The notes under the pieces: generated by a model
The model's database searches: none
What the model was told of the DNA's origin: nothing
The model's input: the letters and a program-made list of their open reading frames with translations, nothing else
Shown here: piece by piece, positions 11,492 to 60,249 of the stretch
How positions within the stretch are numbered: position 1 is the stretch's first letter
How the letters are laid out: every line of letters starts with the position of its first letter
Position numbers and translations under genes: made by a program
Source: Camelus ferus
Lineage: Eukaryota
DNA: 64,000 bases
Direction of reading: 5' to 3'
Assembly (NCBI RefSeq): GCF_009834535.1
Contig: NC_045706.1
Coordinates: 41,354,001-41,418,000, forward strand

Positions 11492-12879
11492 AAGAGAAAT
11501 AGGGTTTGAAAGCAAAACACTTGACATGACCAAAGTTTCTGTTAATCAGTTGGACTGAGAGTCCATTGACATACATTAAGATCATCAGCCCACAAGGAAG
11601 TCTTCATTGTCAGGCCAATAAATTTGAAGTCTGAATAAACTGTTAGCCAGGGTTGCTTGAAGAGTTCAAGTTTGCTTGAAGCAATGAATCATATAACTTA
11701 GATGTTCTCAGATTTTTGTGAAGTTCGTTTTCCTGCATTTGACAGCAACAGATGCTTTCTGAAACTAAAGCCCGTAGATTAGAGAACGCTGGCCTTTGCT
11801 GGAGGCTACTCTGTGCTCTGAGTGTGCCAGGGCCACCACTGTCTTAGATTGTCCCTTGCATTAGACTGTTGGCAGAGCTTTGTTGCCCTGAGAGATTTAA
11901 CATGAAAAAAAAATCCCCTGCAATACTAGTTTTGAGAGATGTGTAGTCTGCAAAGGACTTAACTTAGAGTTAGCAGATGTAAGCTTTAGAGAGGCAGCAG
12001 TGGCCTCCGTTGTTAGAAGAGATCAGGGCTCCTCTCCTCACTCCATCATCTTTGTCATTCCTATTAGCTCTGTTGAAAATTTGGTGGGAAAGGAAATTTT
12101 TAAAAAGTAGCTGCCGTGGATGTCTTGGATGATTGGTGTAGTTCATGCTCTTTGCCCAAATTATCATAGATAATCCATCCCTTTTCTTTCAGACTCTTAG
12201 CCATTGAGCCCTTTTAGAATGTGGTAAATTACTAAGGTGTTATCTGTTTTTTTTTTTCTTTTTTCCTGTTTCATTTAATGTGACCTTCCAGTAAAAAATG
12301 GCTTTCTTTTAAAACTACAATTTATTATTGATATATAATTAGAAATATATGGTAAAATCATTCTCTTTTGATTCCTGCCTTTTAGAGAGCATCTCTTTCT
12401 GTCTTTTGGGTAGCTATTAAATTTGGATGTGAATTACAGAGGGTTTCCAAATACTGGATTGTTTAGTGTTTTCAGCTGTGAAGTTTCTTACCCTAGGTGT
12501 AAGTTGGTAAAACTTCCTTACTGAGAGTTAAGTTGCACATAATCAGTAATTCAGTCTAGAAAATGCCAAGTTAAGTAAGGCCTATGATGTTCCGTATTTG
12601 GTGTGATTTTATTGACTTTTATCTGTAGCTGATACTACATGATTCATTTGTCTCCTTAGTTAGCTTATATCCACATTGGACCTTCAGATATTTGCCAGGT
12701 TGTCTCATACGCTGGGCTGAAAATGAGGCTGTGACAAATTTGTAAAGGTAAAAACCTTGGTTCACTCTCTAATAGGAAGAACAATTTCAAATGATTTTTA
12801 CGTGATTTTTCACCCTAATTAAAGGCTATTAAAAGCTATTTATTTAGACTTTTTAAAGATACTCTGAAAAATGCAAAGG

Positions 12880-13070
12880 AGGAAGCGATAAATGACCCAA
12901 TAATTCATCCACTCAAATAAGACTTGTTAATATTTTTATGTTTATCCTGTAAGTCTTTTTAAATCTAGCATAAACATTGTATGTATATGCACACATGTAT
13001 ATATAAATACAGAATTGATCATTTTGTACATCTTGTTTTATAGTCCTCTTTAAGAATTTTTTGTATTTTT
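12880..13070 (-). mobile_element. L1ME 3' fragment
   Basis: aaaaatgcaaagg...cccaataattcatccactcaaataagacttgttaatattttt...gatcattttgtacatcttgttt is a typical antisense old-L1 3' end. Confidence 0.5.
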
Positions 13071-13492
13071 GGACTTGGGAATTTTTTTAACTGGAAAAAT
13101 AAAACAGTATTTAAGGAAAAAGCCTGAAGCTGAAGAAAACCATCCTGAAATATCCAGCCACTACTAAGATAAAAAATTTATTTTATTTTATTTTTGTTTC
13201 TTGTTGGTTTTTCTTAGTAGGCGTACATGACTCTTTTTTCAGAGTGGCTGAGTTTGATTTGTTCTCAATGGACTCTGGGAAGCAGTGAGGGAGTTTTAGG
13301 AGAGACAGGGTCTGAAAATCCTCACACTTACTGTGATACACAACCTTCCGATGACACTACTTTCTACTGGAGGGACCCTCTTGGAGATGTTCTTGGGAGA
13401 TGTTCTTCAGTTGGTTAGAGTATTTGAATGATTTTAATTGTGAATCGAAGAACCTTTAAAATTGACTTAATGTCCGCTATTTCTGCATTTAG

Positions 13493-13541: not shown

Positions 13542-15257
13542 GTAAGTTCTCTGGGGATATACAGAAACTGCATCTTCTACAGCTCTTGCTGATTCCTCTC
13601 TCAGTAGAATTGGCCAAATTGTAGGGAAGTTTTCTGAAAACAGTAATATATGAGTAAAATATATGGTATAGCTCTTTTAGCATGTAGATTAAATTGATAC
13701 ATTAAGTGAATGTTTAAAAAAAAACTGTTAGTAAAATATTTTTGCAGGCAAATCAGACTAGCTAAATGGTTACATTTATCTTACAGGTGCCCTTAAGATA
13801 CAGCAGCCTTGTTATTTATAAATGTGCTACAGTTAGGTTCTGTGGGGGGGAAAAGCGAGGAATGCCCTGAATCTTTATAGATTTGAAGAATTATTTCTCA
13901 ATTTTTTTTTATAATTTGAATTTATTTTTTCTTGCTCAAATTTCACAAAGGTGAAAAAACTCATTGCTTTTCAAAGGAATGTTTAAACATATTCCATACT
14001 ATATTTTAAATATGAAATACATAGCCCTTGTGTTTTTTTATTTGGCTGCATAAAGCATCAGATGTTATAGTGGAAAAGCATTTCAGAATGAAAAGGATAT
14101 TTAAACAAGTTTCCATATGCCCGGTGAAGAATTTAAAATTGAGCTCTTCCCCCCCTCTTTTTTAATTCAGTAATTAACTAAACTTGCCCTGTAGTTGGAG
14201 GGACTGTAATAGTTTACACCTGTTTCAACTTTGGCTGTTTTTATTGGCTGGGGCTTTTGCCATCCCATATTTCTTGCGAAGCAAAAATATGAAATAAAAT
14301 ATAGCAGAGCATTGGAGAAATTATAATAAACATAAAAAATGAATTGTTCAGCTTAAAATATGAAATGCTTACCTGCACAATCCACAAAGCCAGGTTTCAG
14401 TAGTATTGAAGTAATTTATTCTTGGAGTTCTGTGTCGTGAAAATAAAGACAGTTGCTTTCATTGGCAGGAATAACCCAGGGTTTTTTTTTTTTTTTTTTT
14501 TTTTTTATAATCAGATGATTAAATTTTGGAACATCAAGGCAGAAGGCATATTGTAAAGACAGAGAAAGCCTGCTAAATCATCCTGTGTGTGCGTTCATGT
14601 TACTGTGAATAAAAAACCTGAGGGTGTGCCGGTGTGTAAGAGAGTGAAGACTCCGTAGATCTGTTGTACCACAGAAGAGAGTCAGCCTTCAAAGGTCAGG
14701 GCGTGCTGCGATGGCAGGCGTGGGCTGGCTCATTTCACAGGCAGCGTTTCCCCCTCCAAACGTAATGAAAAGAAAACTGTTGGGTCAAGATAGTATCATA
14801 TCATGTTTTTTCTTGCAGTCCCACTTTCAGAGGGTCCCCCAGAAGCACTCTTTATCCTTCAGTCCTGACGTTAGTTGCTGAGCTCTGGTGTTGGGTAAAG
14901 AGTAAGATGACTAGCTTCTTAGTGCATTGTCCAGAGTAAGAGGAGCTAAATTAAATTTCTGGTAAGTTTTAATTTGGATAGAGTTGTGACTGTAACAAGA
15001 TCTTTGGGAAAATTGTCTCTAGAACTGAATTTTAATTCTTGATTCACCTCACTAGTTGGATGGCTGTGCCTGTATGAACCAAGGTTGCAGGTTGAAGGAA
15101 GGCAAGGCCTTGCCTGTTTCGATTCACCAGCAGCTGGTGAGAGACTGAGCTGCTCTTTCCTTTCTGGGTCTGTCAGATGAACATCTTAAATACCTGAGTT
15201 TACACGGAGAGAGAAATATTCTGCAAACCTCCTCCCCCCACTCTCTCGTTTCTTCAG

Positions 15258-53139: not shown

Positions 53140-54135
53140 AAATTCAGTTAAAAGAGCCGTTTCCTTCCCCTCAGCTTCCACACCTTCCTGCCACAGATCT
53201 GTTTCTCCCCCTCCAGTTTGGCCTTTTCCAGGATGTCATTTATGTAGCATCATGCAGTATTTAATCTTTGGCATCTTCTTTTGCTTAATAATAATCTTTC
53301 GAGATGCATCTGGGTTTCTGGGTATATCAGTAGTTTATTGTTTCTGTTCTTAGGAGAAGGAGAAATCTGTGGTGTAGATTTACTACTTTTTTGTTGTTGT
53401 TCACTCACCAGTTCAGAGGCATTTGAATTGTTTACATTGTATGGCCGTTATACATGAAGGTTCTGTAGAATTCACAGATTGGTCTCTGTGTGGCCATACA
53501 TTTTTATGTCTCTTGGGTAAGTGCCTTTGATTGGAGTTGCTGGCTCATAATGGTAAGTGTGTGTTTCACTTTGTCAGAAGCTGCCAAATTGTTTTGTAAA
53601 GTGGCTCTACCATTTTGGATTCCCACCAGCAGCGTGTGAGCATTTCAGTTGTTTCACATCCTTTCCAGCGCTTGGTACTGTCCACCTTTCTAATGTCGGC
53701 CCTTCTGGTGGATACCTTAGTTAATTTCTCATTGTGGATTTATTTACATTTTTCTGATGACCAGTGTTGCTGAGCAGGTTTTCATGTGCTATTATTGGCC
53801 ATTTCTATGGAATCTTTTGTTCAGTGTCTGTTCCACATTTTGCTAATTTTTCATTGGGGCTGTTTATTGAGGAGTAAGAGTTCTGGATGCAGGTCCTTTG
53901 TTGGGTGTATGTTTTGTCAGTATTTTTCCAGTTTGTGCCTTTGTTCTACATTTCAAGCATTTTCATTTTACTCTTTCTATATAGTTTTCATCTCTAGTAA
54001 ACTCACCCCCTCCATATGTACACGGTGATCATTTTTGCAGTCAGATCCTTATCATAGTTGTTACTGTTTTAAATGTCCTGTCTGATGCTTAAAATCTGGG
54101 CCATCTTGGGGTCTGGTTCTGTTGACTATGTCATT
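53140..54135 (-). mobile_element. L1MB/MC fragments (3'UTR, ORF2 end, plus a more 5' piece)
   Basis: ccttttccaggatgtcat, ttggagttgctggctcataatggtaag, gctctaccattttggattcccaccagcagcgtgtgag, ctgggccatcttggggtctggttctgttgact. Confidence 0.8.
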
Positions 54136-54459
54136 TGTTAACAATCATGAAAAAATATAGAATAAAATGGAAATCTTGAATACTCTTATTTTTAGGAAGT
54201 AGTTTTAATTTCTCTGTTCTAGATTTTTTTTCCTTTAAAAATCAGATGTGTTACCAAATATCACAACTTTTGGGGTAGAGGTGCTGCTCCTTTTACTACC
54301 TTCTTGTGGAACAGGTGAAGAAGAGTGAAACTGGATAAAGGCAAGGAAGACAGGGGAGAGGTGGAAGGGAAGAAGGGGGTGTGGGCATCCATCATCAGTT
54401 CCTAAAAGGCCAAATTCACCTTTTAATGTAACTGAAATGTTTAGTTGAGTCTTTATTTT

Positions 54460-54725
54460 GCGAATGAGAGAATAGAGTGTCAGAGGTGACTGGTATTTAT
54501 AAGATCAATATGTAAGATTTATTGCTACTTAATGGCGAAGCCAGGACTGAAAGATGCTCCTGATTCAAAGCTCCATGGTGCTAAACAAGATCTTTGATCT
54601 CTCTAAACTTCCTTGTCAAGTGTCGAAGGAGGAGCATGCCTGCTTTATAAGGCTGTATGGATGAGGTGGAGATCGTGTGTGTGTGTGTTTACGAAGTGTT
54701 GATGTATACCAGGTGCTTGGTAAAC
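54460..54725. mobile_element. Two MIR fragments in opposite orientation
   Basis: + strand gaagccaggactgaaagatgctcctgattcaaagctcc; - strand gctgtatggatgaggtggagat...aagtgttgatgtataccaggtgcttggtaaacg. Confidence 0.5.
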
Positions 54726-56032
54726 GTTTCTTTCCTTGGTTTCATCTTGGCTTACTGTAAATTACTTTTTTTGTGGACATACTAAATAGAAAGTTGGTAG
54801 TAAATGCAGAATTAAATCTTTTATGATCCTTCGTTTTTTTTCCCCCCAACAAAATGCACAGGGTCAGACTGAAAGTAAGACTTCTTTTGGAAGATTCCCT
54901 GAATCATTTCAGCTTCAGAAAATAGAAGTTTTATATCATCTTTAGATGCTCTGATTTCAGTCAGTGCATATTATTGCCTTGGGTCAGGTATGCCAATTTA
55001 TACAAAAAAGCAGTTTTGAAGACTTTTCCTTGCCTTTTCTTCTGTGAATTCCTCTTGTTGTGAGCTTTTGATCTTCACTGAATGACCTTGGAAAAGAAAG
55101 GGAAAAGATCAATAAAGTGTAAATCTTAAACTTTCCCGTCAATTTTTTTTCCCACATGAATTCACAGCATTCTGAATCTCACCTTTAGGTCTGACCCTCA
55201 TTGAAGAAAACCTCAAAAATTTTCTTTGGCACAACAGCCTGCATCCTAGGAATCATTTCTGAGCTTTGCACTACTTTGTTTGCCCTTTTAACGAACACAC
55301 ATTCCAAGGATTGCATTAGTTTAAATGGATGGTGTGTGTAACTCGAAGTTCTCTTACTTGGGAAAACTCAGTTTTATTAGTGACATTGAGTTCTTGTGTT
55401 TGTTTACTACATTTATAGAAAGCGCTTTGCTTTGGGCCAGTTACAGTATGCAAACCAGAGCCCATCAACTTGTAAAACAAGATTTCTTTTCCTTCTCTAA
55501 AACTGGTGGGTGTACCTAGTTCAATAATTTTTCTGATCAGACCAAAGAAGAATTTAAAAACTGAGGACTTGGGACCAGCCTTGTGTTCACGTAGCTATTT
55601 CTTTTTTCTTTAACAGTAGGGTTCCAAGAAGAGATAGTGTCTAGATGTTTACTTGAGGGATTAATAAACCTTTCTTTTGGAGTTTAAAAGGATTGTAAAA
55701 AGTTTTATACAGTAAAAGTCCAAGCTGATAGCGTGAGCAGTTAGGAAAGCTATTTGTCTTAGAATATTCACCAGACTATATGTTAAAAACTTCACTGCTG
55801 ACAGTGAGCAATAAATCATAGTTTCCTAAGCCGTGTTTATGAATATGTAATTAAAATACTTCTGCTACTAAGTGAAAACTCTTTTCTTGTGTAGTATCTA
55901 CAGTAGTGCTTGCCACGTAGTAAGCTCTCTGTAAGGATTGGTTGAGTGAGAGTAGATATTGAGCCTTTTAATTTGTTACTGGTTTTGAAAATACAGTTTA
56001 GTTAAATTTTTTACTTAAAAGGATTATTTGAG

Positions 56033-57426
56033 CTTAGGGCTCAAGGTGTGGCCTGTGGTCTGTTCAAGTCAACATTCTCGCTTAAGTGTCCAGAGAAGAA
56101 CCAAGGTGCAGAAGATGGAAAGAGGTTGGCTCCGTGGGGAAGGACTCTTCCTCTGCCTCATTCTCTACCTGCTGCTCCAAGAAAGAGAGACACTTTCGTT
56201 ATTAGTGACTTAGGTCTTGACCAGCATGGGATAGATCCTGTGGTCCAGCAGTGTTTGACAGAAATGCTTCCATCCATACATCAGCCACAGCATTCCCACT
56301 CATGTCAGCATCTCCTTCACATGATGACATCGTTCCTGTGGCTAAATAGGATCTAGTACAACCCGTTGATGAGGTGGAACCCAGAGGAATGTGGGGGTGT
56401 CAGGAAGTGCAGCATGGCAGCTGAGAACCTGTGGCTTCCAGATACCTTCACTGAGGAGTTTGTGGATGTGGATCAGGTGCCTGCAGGTCTCAGGGCTTGT
56501 GTCAACAGTGAAGGTCCATCAGATACGATAAGCCACTATGGGTGGTCAGCATCTGAAACCTGGACATCTTCTATTTCCCCATTGATGAACAGAGCTTCAC
56601 ACTCACCTTTGGCGCTTTCATCTAAACCAGTGGCCGTCAGGCACAGGTCCAGCTTCTACATGATGAACCTTCTGGTAAACCGGTGGCTTTCTGCTTGTCA
56701 TCAGTGCCTTCAGTTTCTAAGTGCTGGCAGAAGGTGAGAGTCGTGCCCCATTCCAGACGATACTTCTGCAGGACCACGTTATCTTTCTACCCATGATGAA
56801 TGACTTATTCCTGGCCACTGGCACCCCCTCATCAGTGTCTGCTTGGCCCTGTTTATCTCTGATGGTGCAGGTCAGCTTGCTGGAGACCGTGTTCATCACC
56901 TGCTTGTTGTACCTGGCCCCCACCTATGCCTTGGGGGGCCACTCTCTGTTTCTATGTTGCACCAGCCCAAGGAAATGCTGCCCCACTGCACACCAGGAGG
57001 GAAACAAGGGTCTAGGTCTCACCCCCGGCCACCTACCTGCCCTGAAGGTGCCAGGGACCAGAGAGACAGAGTTAAATGGATGCCTTGCATCAACAAGGGC
57101 CGCTAGGAACGTGAGACTCAGAAGCAACACTTGGTAGACCTGTGGGTGCTGTTCAGCCACACAGTAGACACTCTGTCTGCTCTTCCACCTCTACCTGCCC
57201 TTCTTGGCCTCCTCAGTCAGCACCGTCATTATTCTCCAGAACACCTCGGCCGACGCCCATGTGCAAACTCCAGTCCACAGCTTCTCTTGCCCCTGAAGAC
57301 CAGTCAGGCTCTCATGCCCGTCCAGGTCCCAGCCCCACAGCCCTGGCAACCACCTTGTTTTTAACTCACAAATTCCTGCTGTACTTCTTTGGTTGAATTA
57401 TCCCCAGTAAACTCCTTTGCAGGGGG
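56033..57426 (+). pseudogene. HTR3C: Processed (intronless) pseudogene of a 5-HT3 receptor C/E-type subunit (Cys-loop ligand-gated ion channel); former CDS ~56115-57248
   Basis: Successive frames give [125 protein letters not shown] and [16 protein letters not shown], collinear with HTR3C/HTR3E as recalled. Blocks of 67, 110, 169 and 205 nt match recalled exons 1, 4, 5 (170, less a 1 nt deletion) and 7, with no introns. Multiple stops and frameshifts. Decayed polyA signal (cagtaaa ~57405) and a weak TSD (aaaaggattatttga 56017 vs aaaagggggacaatttga 57428). The C versus E parent is not resolved. Confidence 0.93.
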
Positions 57427-58019
57427 AAAAAGGGGGACAATTTGACTTTATTTTTTGAAGATACATTTTTGGTAGAATTTAAGCCCTTAATAATTTTATA
57501 GTTGCTAATGTTTTTTTGTGAAGAAAGATCTAGGAGTTTTAAGTAAAACGCTTGTGTTTGATAGTGTACATTGAGAATATAAACAGTATTCCTAGGGAAA
57601 CTTAAAAAATACGTTAATAAGTAACATAATGTGACATTCAGTATGCCAGTAGTAGTTACATACTTGTTAAATAGGTCCAATGTATGAAACTAAGAAAATA
57701 GTATCCCTCAAAATGTTACATAATTCAGAGTGACCATTATTTTCCCTATATTAGCTGGAACTTTCCCCATTTTCCTCCTGAATTATTGTTTCATTGCTTA
57801 AAGTGCATTAAAATATTTCTGTTTGACTCTTTTTCTGCAAAGTACATATTTTGGGCCCTTGATGATTTCAAGCAGCATAAAATTAGTTTTCTTTGGTGAC
57901 TGAACTGGTTACAAATGCCTTAGTAGTAAACATTCATGGATTCACAATAAAAGGGAAGAGGTGAAGGGAAGGAGGGAGGGAGGGGTGCGCTTGTCTGTAA
58001 TACTGTGAAGTTACAGGTA

Positions 58020-58760
58020 ATGCTTTTAAAGAAATGTGGTTTGGTTACTTAAGGCTTTTCTACCATTTTATTATAAAAAATACAAAAAATTTCAAAGGAT
58101 GATGCAAGGGCTACCATATACCCACTACTTACATTCTGTAACTACTTTTTCCATACTTCCTTCATCACATGTGGATCCATCTGTCCATCTTTCTGTTTAT
58201 TCGTCCATCCATTTTACTTTTTGATGCATTTCCAATGGATGTGCAGACATCAGCACACTTCAGCCCTTCACTGTGCATACCAGCAACTGGCATTTGATAC
58301 GTATTCCTAGTGTTTTGTTGCTGTTAAATTTTGAGTAAGTGTAGCATTCAATATGTTTTGACAAACATACACATCCCAGTAACCCCAAGTCTTAGGAAGA
58401 TATAGACTATGACTTGAAGTTTCCTCCTACCCCTTCCCCCAAACTCCCTTGAGTCTCCTATCCCACCCACTGTGACAGCCACTCTGAGTTTTTTTTTTTT
58501 TAATCAATAACCTTTTTTGTTCTAGAATATTACATAAATTGAGATCTACCATATGTACTGTATGGTGTAAGACTCACTGAGCATAATGTTCTTGGGGTTT
58601 CATCCATATTGTCACGTATATCAGTAATTCGTTCATCTTTATTAATGAGTTGTATTACACTGTATGGAACCCACCAGAGTTTATTTCCTTGTTTATGGAC
58701 ACTGGCTGCTTCCCGTTTTTGATTATTATGAACAAAGCTGCTGAGAACAAGTCATTTACT
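58020..58760 (-). mobile_element. L1MB/MC 3' fragments
   Basis: gatgcatttccaatggatgtgcagacatcagcacacttcagccc; gttttgacaaacatacacatcccagtaacc; tccatattgtcacgtatatcagtaattcgttc. Confidence 0.8.
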
Positions 58761-58786
58761 TGCTGGGTATTTCCATTTGATTAACT

Positions 58787-59400
58787 CGGGGACTTGAAAA
58801 TTAGTGTGCTCAAAATTGAGCTCACCTGAATGTGTCTCTTCTCCGTGAGTCCCTGTGTCAGTGAGTGGCACCACCCTGCGCAGTGCTGCCCGACTCATAA
58901 CCTCGGGTGCCGTTCTCGACTGCCCCCGTCCCTGATCTCTCAGCCATAGTCAGATACAAAGTCCTGCCAGTACTGTCTTCGTGTCTACTCACTTTGCATT
59001 GTGCCATGATCACTATCCTGTTGGAAGTTGTCACCATTTTCCTCTGGGTTGCCAAAATAACCTCCTTACTGGGCTCCTTGCCACCTCTCCGGGTTCTCCA
59101 TTACTTTCTCCAAACTACGGTCAAAGATCTTTGAAAAAATACACATTCGATCACATTATTTTCCTATTAAAACGTCTAGTTGTTTCCCATTGCTCCTAGG
59201 ATAAAAAAGTAAAATCCTTAGTTTGCAAGGCTCTGCATTGATTTGACTCCCGTATCTTCCCTGGTTCTTAAATTTCTAACCACGTTGGGTCTGCACATCC
59301 CACGTGCTTCTCACCTTAGACTTCATCTTCCTCTATCTTGGAATGTCTCTCTGATCAGATCATTCCCACTTACACAGTTGTGTTTTAGTGTCTCCTGTAT
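58787..59400 (+). mobile_element. L2 3' region
   Basis: gtgctcaaaattgagctc...cagtgagtggcaccacc...aacctccttactgggctcc...gatcacatt...ttcccattgctcctaggataaaa. Confidence 0.85.
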
Positions 59401-59419
59401 TAAAAACAGACCCAAACTG

Positions 59420-59790
59420 CCTGTATTATTTGGGATTAGAATTGTCTGTGGAAACGGAAAGTGAAAGCAAAGCACAATGATGGTTGTTTAAGTAAGTTGG
59501 AAGATTATTTCTCCTGAAAGGATTCTGCGTGTACAGTTTCCCACTCCGAGACTGTGGCCCTTGTCTTCATAATCCAGATTGGAACTTCAGACGTTGTGGT
59601 CCAATCAGCAGGATGGAAGAAAGGACATGAGACAGTCACTATTTGGATGGTGAGACTTCCTGGAGCTGGCTAACACTTCCCTGGGCAGAACGTAGTTACC
59701 TGACCACACCTGTTTTCAAGGAAGGCTGAGTACTTATGTTAGGTCCATATTCCCAGGTAAAAACTGGAGATTCTAACTGGGAGAAAGTCA
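59420..59790 (-). mobile_element. MLT1J/K-like LTR
   Basis: tgtattatttgggattagaattgtctgtgg...ttccctgggcagaacgtagttacctgaccacacctgttttcaaggaaggctgag. Confidence 0.65.
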
Positions 59791-60249
59791 ACATTGGGGT
59801 AGGCTGTTTGCAACTGCCAGACTTCCCTTAACCTCACATTCCCCTCCAGCACTGTCTTGTTTTTTCTGCTGCTTTTTATAATCAAAACTTGAAAGAGTTG
59901 TCGACTAATGATAATTCTCCTTTTTCAAACCCCCTTCTCAATTCTCAAGTCACACCAACTCCTGTGCTCGTTTTCCACTAAGTTGATTATGTCAAGGTTA
60001 CCCTGACCTTGGTGTTTCAGAAATCCAAAGAGTACTTAAAAGTCTTCATCCGATTTGATTTCTCAGTAGCTTTCAGTTCTTTTCTTTTTCCCTTCAGGGA
60101 CGCTCCTGTGTGCAGATCAGCCTTGAGTTTTTCATTCATTTTCTGTGACTTCATCTGCCACTATTCTGGAAGCTCATTACCTCTTATTTTTCAGCCTCTC
60201 CTATTCTGCCCATTGTCTGAATGCTGGAGTTTCTCAAGGTTTAGGTGTT

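What the first reader, a model, noticed from the sequence alone, without database searches (positions are those of the whole stretch)
56033..57426. Intronic retrocopy of a serotonin 5-HT3 receptor C/E-type subunit, spread over five short ORFs
The ORF track splits it into unremarkable pieces, but stitched together they follow the subunit from signal peptide to M4 and through the 3'UTR with introns removed. It is disabled: both Cys-loop cysteines are lost (TGA at 56554, TTC at 56596, exactly C-x13-C apart), with further stops at 56354, 56623 and 56717, and several frameshifts. A heritable retrocopy implies the parent was transcribed in the germline or early embryo, which is notable for a subfamily absent in rodents and poorly characterised. 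It mixes C-like (SIPTH, MMND, LETVFIT) and E-like (WNPEEC, SMAA, QKQH) residues relative to the human genes, so it may record the ancestral or non-primate sequence. I do not know whether it is already annotated.
Basis: partly seen in the sequence, partly recalled or inferred. Interest (0 to 1): 0.72.

Follow-up and report, generated by a model that had tools for sequence, protein, structure and literature searches.

The report
Ancient dead retrocopy of HTR3D-type gene
This is an ordinary, long-dead, intron-less mRNA copy of a serotonin 5-HT3 receptor subunit gene; it comes from the D-type paralogue (not C or E), was made from a mis-spliced transcript lacking exon 6, and is older than the camel-whale split.

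Summary
Window 56032-57421 (+) is a full-length, intron-free copy of a 5-HT3 receptor subunit mRNA, running from the 5'UTR to the parent's poly(A) site. It is flanked by a ~15-nt target-site duplication at a TT|AAAA site.

Three points of the interpretation need correcting.

1. The parent is the D-type paralogue, the gene just upstream of HTR3C that is labelled "HTR3C" in dromedary. Both UTRs and exons 1, 3, 4 and 5 match it only. A protein tree puts the copy in the HTR3D clade, and AU tests reject C (p=0.0009) and E (p=0.0004). The apparent C/E mix reflects comparison with human genes and gene conversion among the camel C/D/E genes.

2. The copy is old. Orthologous copies with the same flanks, the same missing exon 6 and several of the same lesions occur in a finless porpoise and in at least two unidentified mammals that branch outside camel+porpoise.

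3. It was dead on arrival. Exon 6 is 161 nt, so skipping it shifts the frame.

Substitutions are spread evenly over codon positions. RNA contigs cover the copy and its flanks alike.

"Intronic" could not be verified. The companion note s1-149617, on this same window, had already flagged the exon-6 skip.

The parts
56017..56031 (+). 5' copy of the target-site duplication (AAAAGGATTATTTGA), preceded by TT, giving a TT|AAAA site of the kind cut by the L1 endonuclease
   Evidence: The 5' copy in L003 (AAAAAGACAATTTGA) matches the 3' copies in camel and L011 (...GACAATTTGA) 10 of 10 over the core.
56032..56114 (+). 5'UTR of the retrocopy (exon 1, non-coding part)
   Evidence: 81% identical to dromedary D-type exon 1 (L012:8831-8908) against 57-60% to C and E.
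56115..56181 (+). Exon 1 coding part: ATG and signal peptide
   Evidence: 91% to D, 73% to C, 66% to E. ATG at 56115.
56182..56320 (+). Exon 2 remnant. It has 1-nt deletions at 56186 (camel only) and 56266 (shared with porpoise and L003) and a 4-nt deletion at 56246 (shared with L003). It ends in a camel-only 37-nt deletion that removes the exon 2/3 junction.
56321..56350 (+). Exon 3 remnant (30 of 45 nt)
56351..56460 (+). Exon 4 (110 nt), with TAG at 56354 (Trp to stop, camel only)
   Evidence: 86% to D against 68% (C) and 75% (E). Abuts exons 3 and 5 directly.
56461..56629 (+). Exon 5, the Cys-loop exon. Lesions: 1-nt deletion at 56516 (shared with porpoise); TGA at 56554 (Cys1, camel only); TTC at 56596 (Cys2, shared with porpoise); TAA at 56623 (shared by all four species).
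56629..56630 (+). Exon 5/exon 7 junction. The 161-nt exon 6 is missing exactly, in camel, porpoise, L011 and L003.
56630..56834 (+). Exon 7 (pre-M1 to M3 start). Lesions: +1 insertion at 56677, TAA at 56718, 1-nt deletion at 56827 (shared with porpoise).
56835..57039 (+). Exon 8 (M3 and the start of the M3-M4 loop). Lesions: +1 insertion at 56860, 12-nt deletion at 56933.
57040..57248 (+). Exon 9 coding part (loop, M4). Lesions: 24-nt deletion at 57043; 1-nt deletion at 57099 (shared with porpoise and L011); TAG at 57104 (shared with porpoise); +4 insertion at 57172. The former stop codon now reads TCG at 57246-57248.
57249..57421 (+). 3'UTR of D type. It has a camel-only deletion of about 130 nt at 57368/57369. 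AGTAAA (parent AATAAA) is at 57406-57411, and the copy ends at the parent's cleavage site.
   Evidence: 73% to the D 3'UTR against about 50% (random level) to C and E. Alignment A2..
57422..57437 (+). A/G-only tract (GGGGGAAAAAGGGGGA) where the poly(A) tail should be. It overlaps the start of the 3' target-site duplication.
   Evidence: The same G-rich tract is present in porpoise and L011.
57428..57445 (+). 3' copy of the target-site duplication (AAAAGGGGGACAATTTGA)

Best explanation
Window 56032-57421 is an L1-mediated processed pseudogene. It is a reverse-transcribed copy of a complete, polyadenylated mRNA of the D-type 5-HT3 receptor subunit gene. That gene belongs to the HTR3D orthology group, lies immediately upstream of HTR3C, and is labelled 'HTR3C' or 'HTR3C-like' in non-primates.

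The template was an aberrantly spliced mRNA lacking the 161-nt exon 6. Such an mRNA can only encode a 204-residue truncated ectodomain and would be a substrate for nonsense-mediated decay. The copy therefore never encoded a channel subunit.

It inserted at a TT|AAAA site and made a ~15-nt target-site duplication. This happened before camels and whales diverged, and most likely before cetartiodactyls split from at least one other mammalian lineage. Since then it has decayed neutrally.

What is shown directly: the intron-less colinearity, the D-type parentage, the exact exon-6 gap, shared flanks and lesions in other species, even substitution across codon positions, and the lack of a transcript of its own.

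What is inferred: the L1 machinery, transcription of the skipped isoform in the germline or early embryo, and the absolute age.
For: Exon structure and ends:
- Exon blocks abut with no intron sequence in camel and in porpoise.
- The 5' end maps to an unannotated first exon of the dromedary D-type gene at L012:8831. The 3' end maps to its AATAAA and cleavage site at L012:14099.

Parentage:
- Identity to D/C/E by part: 5'UTR .81/.57/.60; exon 1 .91/.73/.66; exon 3 .87/.73/.70; exon 4 .86/.68/.75; exon 5 .83/.73/.70; 3'UTR .73/.51/.49.
- In the protein tree the retrocopies form one clade (100/97) inside the D-type clade (94/83) together with human HTR3D. AU tests reject placement with C (p=0.0009) and with E (p=0.0004).

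Orthologues in other species:
- L004 aligns to the window from 54195 to 57706, across both junctions, and L003 and L011 each align across one junction.
- L004 comes from PacBio HiFi reads of the East Asian finless porpoise.
- Lesions shared by every orthologue that covers the site: exon-6 absence, 1-nt deletion at 56266, TAA at 56623, 1-nt deletion at 57099.
- Lesions shared by camel and porpoise only: 56516, 56827, TTC at 56596, TAG at 57104.

Insertion hallmarks and exon 6:
- Target-site duplication and TT|AAAA site.
- Exon 6 is 161 nt, and skipping it gives a 204-codon ORF with a premature stop 365 nt upstream of the last exon junction.

Neutral decay and transcription:
- Lineage-specific substitution rates at codon positions 1/2/3 are .085/.067/.096 in camel and .058/.097/.078 in porpoise.
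- Camel-porpoise K2P is 0.23 in the copy against 0.17-0.19 in the flanks.
- RNA-library contigs bridge both ends of the copy at even depth, with no splice joints.
Against: - There is no clean poly(A) tail, only a 16-nt A/G tract that is G-rich in all three species that cover it.
- No empty (pre-insertion) site from an outgroup species could be obtained, so the target-site duplication rests on 15 degenerate bases.
- The position of the retrocopy clade within the D-type clade is unresolved (supports of 40-56; retro + artiodactyl D is not rejected, p=0.26).
- The species behind L003, L011 and L013 are unknown, so an age older than crown Cetartiodactyla is inferred only from lesion and substitution patterns.
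- Exons 2 and 7-9 carry no paralogue signal, because the camel D, C and E genes are homogenised there.
Confidence: 0.93

Rival explanations
1. The retrocopy derives from HTR3C or HTR3E, and its mixed residues reflect an ancestral C/E sequence.
For: tblastn with camelid C and E proteins gives strong hits. In exons 2, 7, 8 and the coding part of exon 9 the copy is equally similar to D, C and E.
Against: - Both UTRs and exons 1, 3, 4 and 5 match only the D-type gene.
- The AU test rejects a clade with C (p=0.0009) or with E (p=0.0004).
- The equal similarity elsewhere is explained by 94-99% homogenisation of those exons between camel D and C (92-96% with E for exons 7-8; exon 2 D-E only 80%).
Confidence: 0.03
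2. The copy has been co-opted, either as an expressed retrogene or truncated decoy subunit, or as a regulatory or non-coding RNA element of its host locus. Co-option would explain its survival in several orders.
For: It has been retained for more than 60 million years at the same site in several lineages. RNA libraries contain it.
Against: - Frameshifts and a stop are shared by all species, so no ORF is conserved.
- Substitutions are spread evenly over codon positions.
- It diverges faster than its flanks (0.23 against 0.17-0.19).
- Each lineage has its own large deletions.
- RNA contigs run through both ends at the depth of the flanks, which fits intronic or nascent RNA, or DNA carry-over.
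- Neutral DNA is routinely still alignable at this age.
Confidence: 0.03
3. It is a DNA-level (segmental) duplicate or an assembly or cDNA contaminant rather than a genuine germline retrocopy.
For: No pure poly(A) tail is present.
Against: - All eight retained junctions are intron-free and the ends coincide with the mRNA ends.
- The same insertion with the same flanks occurs in independent data from other species, including porpoise HiFi reads.
- DNA-like and RNA runs of the window's own species cover the junctions.
Confidence: 0.01

Closest known systems
L1-mediated processed pseudogenes (retrocopies) of mammalian protein-coding genes
   Same: It is an intron-less copy of a full mRNA from the start region to the poly(A) site. 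It has a ~15-nt target-site duplication and a TT|AAAA insertion site, its flanks are unrelated to the parent's, it carries many disabling mutations, and it has drifted neutrally.
   Different: The tail remnant is G-rich rather than A-rich. The template was a non-productive, exon-6-skipped isoform.
HTR3D (5-HT3D subunit gene) and its non-primate orthologues annotated 'HTR3C-like'
   Same: The parent gene sits upstream of HTR3C, which is followed by HTR3E, in dromedary (L012 and L002 on CM016627.2 at 51.794, 51.805 and 51.847 Mb). It clusters with human HTR3D in the tree. The retrocopy shares its UTRs.
   Different: The retrocopy lacks exon 6 and both Cys-loop cysteines and has no open frame. 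It is not a gene of the cluster and lies elsewhere in the genome.
HTR3C and HTR3E
   Same: Same subfamily, with the same exon structure and about 50% protein identity over the C-terminal half.
   Different: The UTRs are unrelated (about 50% identity), exons 1 and 3-5 are clearly more distant, and the AU test rejects both.

Membership tests
Processed pseudogene (L1-mediated retrocopy) | All parental introns absent, with exons abutting exactly | tested here: met
   Exon blocks abut at 56181/82, 56350/51, 56460/61, 56629/30, 56834/35 and 57039/40. The same holds in porpoise.
Processed pseudogene (L1-mediated retrocopy) | Colinear with the mRNA, and the 3' end lies at the parent's polyadenylation site | tested here: met
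   It starts at L012:~8829 and ends at L012:14099, which is 14 nt after the parent's AATAAA.
Processed pseudogene (L1-mediated retrocopy) | Poly(A) tail | tested here: inconclusive
   Only a 16-nt A/G tract (57422-57437) is present, and it is G-rich in camel, porpoise and L011.
Processed pseudogene (L1-mediated retrocopy) | Target-site duplication and a TT|AAAA-like nick site | tested here: met
   56017-56031 against 57428-57445. The copies are degenerate in camel, but the core GACAATTTGA is identical between the L003 5' copy and the camel and L011 3' copies. TT precedes the 5' copy in three species. No empty site was available.
Processed pseudogene (L1-mediated retrocopy) | Flanks unrelated to the parental locus | tested here: met
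   blastn of 55900-57600 against L012, L001 and L002 matches exons only.
Processed pseudogene (L1-mediated retrocopy) | Loss of coding capacity and neutral evolution | tested here: met
   5 stops, 10 frameshifting indels, and even rates across codon positions.
HTR3D orthology group (as source gene) | UTR homology and paralogue-specific exons | tested here: met
   The 5'UTR, exons 1, 3, 4 and 5, and the 3'UTR match the D-position gene only.
HTR3D orthology group (as source gene) | Phylogenetic placement with HTR3D, excluding C and E | tested here: met
   D-type clade 94/83 including human HTR3D. AU p=0.0009 (C) and p=0.0004 (E).
Cys-loop ligand-gated channel subunit (functional member) | Cys-x13-Cys loop, four transmembrane helices and an open reading frame | tested here: not met
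   Cys1 is TGA at 56554 and Cys2 is TTC at 56596. Exon 6 is absent and the frame is broken. Pfam Neur_chan_LBD scores 21.1 bits against a cut-off of 26.
Functional retrogene | Conserved ORF, purifying selection and its own transcript | tested here: not met

The most novel reading that the evidence does not exclude
The copy may be a boreoeutherian-age (roughly 90 million years or more) fossil present in many orders. If so, it preserves the sequence of the HTR3D-type gene as it was before exons 2 and 7-9 of the C/D/E cluster were repeatedly homogenised. It would also record that an exon-6-skipped, decay-prone isoform was present in the germline of an early placental. It could then serve as an external time-stamp for reconstructing the history of gene conversion and paralogue origin in this poorly understood cluster.
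Probability: 0.3. Interest if true: 0.4.

Novelty: new member of a known kind. Interest (0 to 1): 0.25.

Why it matters
The biological importance is limited, because this is one more dead retrocopy. It is useful in three small ways.

1. It corrects the paralogue assignment and shows that the non-primate genes labelled "HTR3C-like" just upstream of HTR3C are HTR3D orthologues.

2. As an unconverted outgroup, it exposes strong gene conversion among camel HTR3C, D and E in exons 2 and 7-9.

3. It is a shared, hierarchically decaying marker. Some lesions are common to every orthologue that covers the site, some only to camel and porpoise, and some only to camel. That makes it usable as a rare genomic change for mammalian phylogeny and as a fossil of an exon-skipped transcript.

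Tried and rejected
- **Host gene and the "intronic" claim.** I looked at ORFs of 90 aa or more across the window and ran a splice-site/ORF/GC heuristic. Neither gave anything recognisable as coding. Earlier scan notes did not name a neighbouring gene.
- **Naming the species behind L003, L011 and L013.**
  - A literature search on run accessions identified only SRR20997935, the finless porpoise.
  - Searches for SINE motifs, tRNA-like sequences and Rfam families in those contigs found nothing diagnostic. One fuzzy-regex attempt timed out.
  - Two metagenome scans with a junction-specific pattern found nothing.
- **More orthologues by protein search.** The last homologue search, using the window's 123-aa ORF, returned only the window's own ORF.
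- **28-nt flank similarity as a long target-site duplication.** The pair 55983-56010 and 57453-57480 (79%) was considered and rejected. One copy lies upstream of the 5' duplication and the other downstream of the 3' duplication, so the order does not fit a duplication made by the insertion.
- **L010.** This 703-bp metagenome contig was excluded beyond about nt 470. It switches there to an HTR3E-like end of exon 5 followed by a GTGAGT intron, and is probably an assembly chimera.
- **Pfam on the C-terminal pieces.** No hit.

Full report
**1. Is it there?**

Yes. A GC-rich island (0.48-0.57 GC) stands out from AT-rich flanks (0.30-0.37) at about 56030-57430.

- Its translated pieces match solved 5-HT3A receptor structures (best E=1.8e-5).
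- They also match the Pfam ligand-binding domain of neurotransmitter-gated channels, below the curated cut-off because the pieces are short and decayed.
- An exhaustive phmmer search with one 65-residue piece found 5-HT3 C/D/E-type proteins at about 62% identity.
- tblastn with camelid HTR3C and HTR3E proteins covers residues 26-456 within 56189-57245, with E down to 4e-46.

**2. Anatomy**

I fetched the genomic loci of three camel paralogues:

- Camelus ferus HTR3C (L001).
- Dromedary HTR3E (L002).
- The dromedary gene immediately upstream of HTR3C (L012).

blastn and semi-global alignment cut the window stretch into exon blocks that abut one another to the base:

| Part | Window coordinates |
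|---|---|
| Exon 1 (5'UTR + signal peptide) | 56032-56181 |
| Exon 2 | 56182-56320 |
| Exon 3 remnant | 56321-56350 |
| Exon 4 | 56351-56460 |
| Exon 5 | 56461-56629 |
| Exon 7 | 56630-56834 |
| Exon 8 | 56835-57039 |
| Exon 9 with 3'UTR | 57040-57421 |

No intron sequence is retained at any junction.

The 5' end coincides with the start of an unannotated first exon of the L012 gene. The 3' end lies 14 nt after that gene's AATAAA, which reads AGTAAA in the copy at 57406-57411.

Where the tail should be there is only a 16-nt A/G tract (57422-57437).

The insert is bracketed by a degenerate ~15-nt direct repeat, at 56017-56031 and 57428-57445. Its ancestral form can be read across species as AAAAGGACAATTTGA, and its 5' copy is preceded by TT in three species. 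That gives the TT|AAAA site typical of L1 endonuclease nicking. The L1 mechanism itself is inferred from these hallmarks.

**3. Which gene was copied?**

Not C or E. Spliced with the newly recognised exon 1, the L012 gene gives an intact 456-codon ORF. It sits upstream of HTR3C, which in turn lies upstream of HTR3E (record coordinates; L001/L012 overlap). From memory, this is the order D-C-E of the human cluster.

Identity of the retrocopy to camel D / C / E, part by part:

| Part | D | C | E |
|---|---|---|---|
| 5'UTR | .81 | .57 | .60 |
| Exon 1 coding | .91 | .73 | .66 |
| Exon 3 | .87 | .73 | .70 |
| Exon 4 | .86 | .68 | .75 |
| Exon 5 | .83 | .73 | .70 |
| 3'UTR | .73 | .51 | .49 |

In exons 2, 7, 8 and the coding part of exon 9 the three values are equal. 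The camel paralogues themselves are 92-99% identical there (exon 2: D-C only, D-E 80%), against 67-81% in the other exons. That is the signature of gene conversion.

I also built a maximum-likelihood tree of 50 proteins. The retrocopies were read codon by codon in the parent's frame, with X at every break.

- The four retrocopies form one clade (100/97).
- That clade sits inside a D-type clade (94/83) containing human and green-monkey HTR3D, the carnivore, bat and horse "C-like/D" genes, and the artiodactyl D-position genes.
- C and E form their own clade (91/93).
- AU tests reject joining the retrocopies to C (p=0.0009) or to E (p=0.0004).
- A sister relation to the artiodactyl D genes is not rejected (p=0.26).

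Human HTR3D sits on a very long branch. This explains why a reader comparing with human proteins saw only C-like and E-like residues.

**4. The missing exon**

Exon 6 of the parent is 161 nt. It is absent exactly, from the last base of exon 5 to the first base of exon 7, in all four species. This confirms the companion note s1-149617 on this window.

Skipping it shifts the frame. The parent mRNA without exon 6 would encode 204 residues, with a premature stop 365 nt upstream of the last exon junction. That makes it a candidate for nonsense-mediated decay. The copy could therefore never have encoded a channel subunit.

**5. Age**

ORF fragments found by the phmmer search led to contigs from other organisms.

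- L004 aligns to the window from 54195 to 57706, through both junctions.
- L003 covers the 5' flank plus most of the copy.
- L011 and L013 cover the copy plus the 3' flank to 58135.
- L004 comes from PacBio HiFi reads of the East Asian finless porpoise (PMC9747978).

The lesions are nested:

- **Shared by every orthologue that covers the site:** exon-6 absence, the 1-nt deletion at 56266, TAA at 56623, the 1-nt deletion at 57099.
- **Shared by camel and porpoise only:** the 1-nt deletions at 56516 and 56827, TTC for Cys2 at 56596, TAG at 57104.
- **Camel only:** TGA for Cys1 at 56554, TAG at 56354, TAA at 56718, the 37-nt and 24-nt deletions, and the ~130-nt 3'UTR deletion.

At sites where camel D, C and E agree, parsimony counts are 65 camel-only, 64 porpoise-only, 48 L011-only, 31 camel+porpoise and 25 all-shared changes in 794 sites.

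The insertion therefore predates the camel-whale split, which is the base of Cetartiodactyla at roughly 60-65 million years by common estimates (my knowledge, not tested here). L003 and L011 branch outside camel+porpoise, so it probably predates the split from at least one other order. I could not name those species.

**6. Function**

None is apparent.

- Lineage-specific substitutions fall evenly on codon positions 1, 2 and 3.
- The copy diverges faster between camel and porpoise (K2P 0.23) than its flanks do (0.17-0.19).
- Each lineage has its own deletions.
- In four RNA libraries of the window's species, contigs of 2.4-4.0 kb run straight through both ends of the copy in three of them (the fourth, X7, gives only short pieces that break at the 5' end), at the same depth as the flanks and with no splice joints. 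That fits intronic or nascent RNA, or DNA carry-over, and not a transcript of the copy's own.

**7. What remains open**

- I found no host exon in the window, so "intronic" is unverified.
- No empty site was available.
- I could not check whether the camel annotation already lists this pseudogene.
- A search of the held literature found no description of a 5-HT3 subunit retrocopy.
- That the window is from a camel rests on earlier scan notes. I did not test it independently.

**8. Verdict**

The object is an ordinary processed pseudogene. Three corrections apply: the source is D-type, the copy is ancient and shared across species, and it was dead on arrival. Interest is low to modest.

Noticed in passing
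L012:10125-10291, 12845-13049, 13213-13428 against L001:11358-11524, 14582-14786, 14977-15192: Camel D-type and HTR3C genes are 95-99% identical in exons 2, 7 and 8 (HTR3E 92-96% in exons 7-8) but only 69-81% in exons 1 and 3-6. This is a strong sign of gene conversion within the C/D/E cluster.
   Followed up: partly
L012:8831-8975: The dromedary protein model P0166 ('HTR3C', 460 aa) starts inside intron 1. An unannotated upstream exon with a normal signal peptide, plus the 45-nt exon 3, gives an intact 456-aa ORF. The public N-terminus therefore looks mis-annotated.
   Followed up: partly
L010:~470-703: This metagenome contig (ERZ27256637) starts as the retrocopy orthologue, closest to porpoise. 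It then switches to an HTR3E-like end of exon 5 followed by a GTGAGT intron. It is probably an assembly chimera of host reads.
   Followed up: partly
window 55983-56010 and 57453-57480: A 28-nt similarity (79%) lies just outside the two target-site duplication copies. Its order does not fit a long duplication made by the insertion, so it is probably a pre-existing AT-rich local repeat at the target.
   Followed up: partly
window 56758: C in the window but T in contigs of three of four RNA-labelled runs of the same species. It is probably a polymorphism inside the retrocopy.
   Followed up: no
P0005 (Prolemur simus 'HTR3D', UniRef): This gene model reads the Cys-loop exon in a shifted frame (…GWTPSVNWTSSISPLMNR…), the same wrong frame as the window's ORF. 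That suggests a frameshifted or mis-modelled HTR3D in that lemur.
   Followed up: no
window 57422-57437; L004 and L011 at the equivalent site: The tail remnant of the retrocopy is G-rich (runs of 5-7 G) in all three species that cover it, so it was already so in their common ancestor. This is unusual for a poly(A) remnant and is unexplained.
   Followed up: no
window 54000-59900: Libraries labelled RNA, including 'reproductive system metagenome' metatranscriptomes, hold unspliced contigs over this whole AT-rich stretch at even depth. The cause is either host-gene intron signal or genomic DNA carry-over.
   Followed up: no
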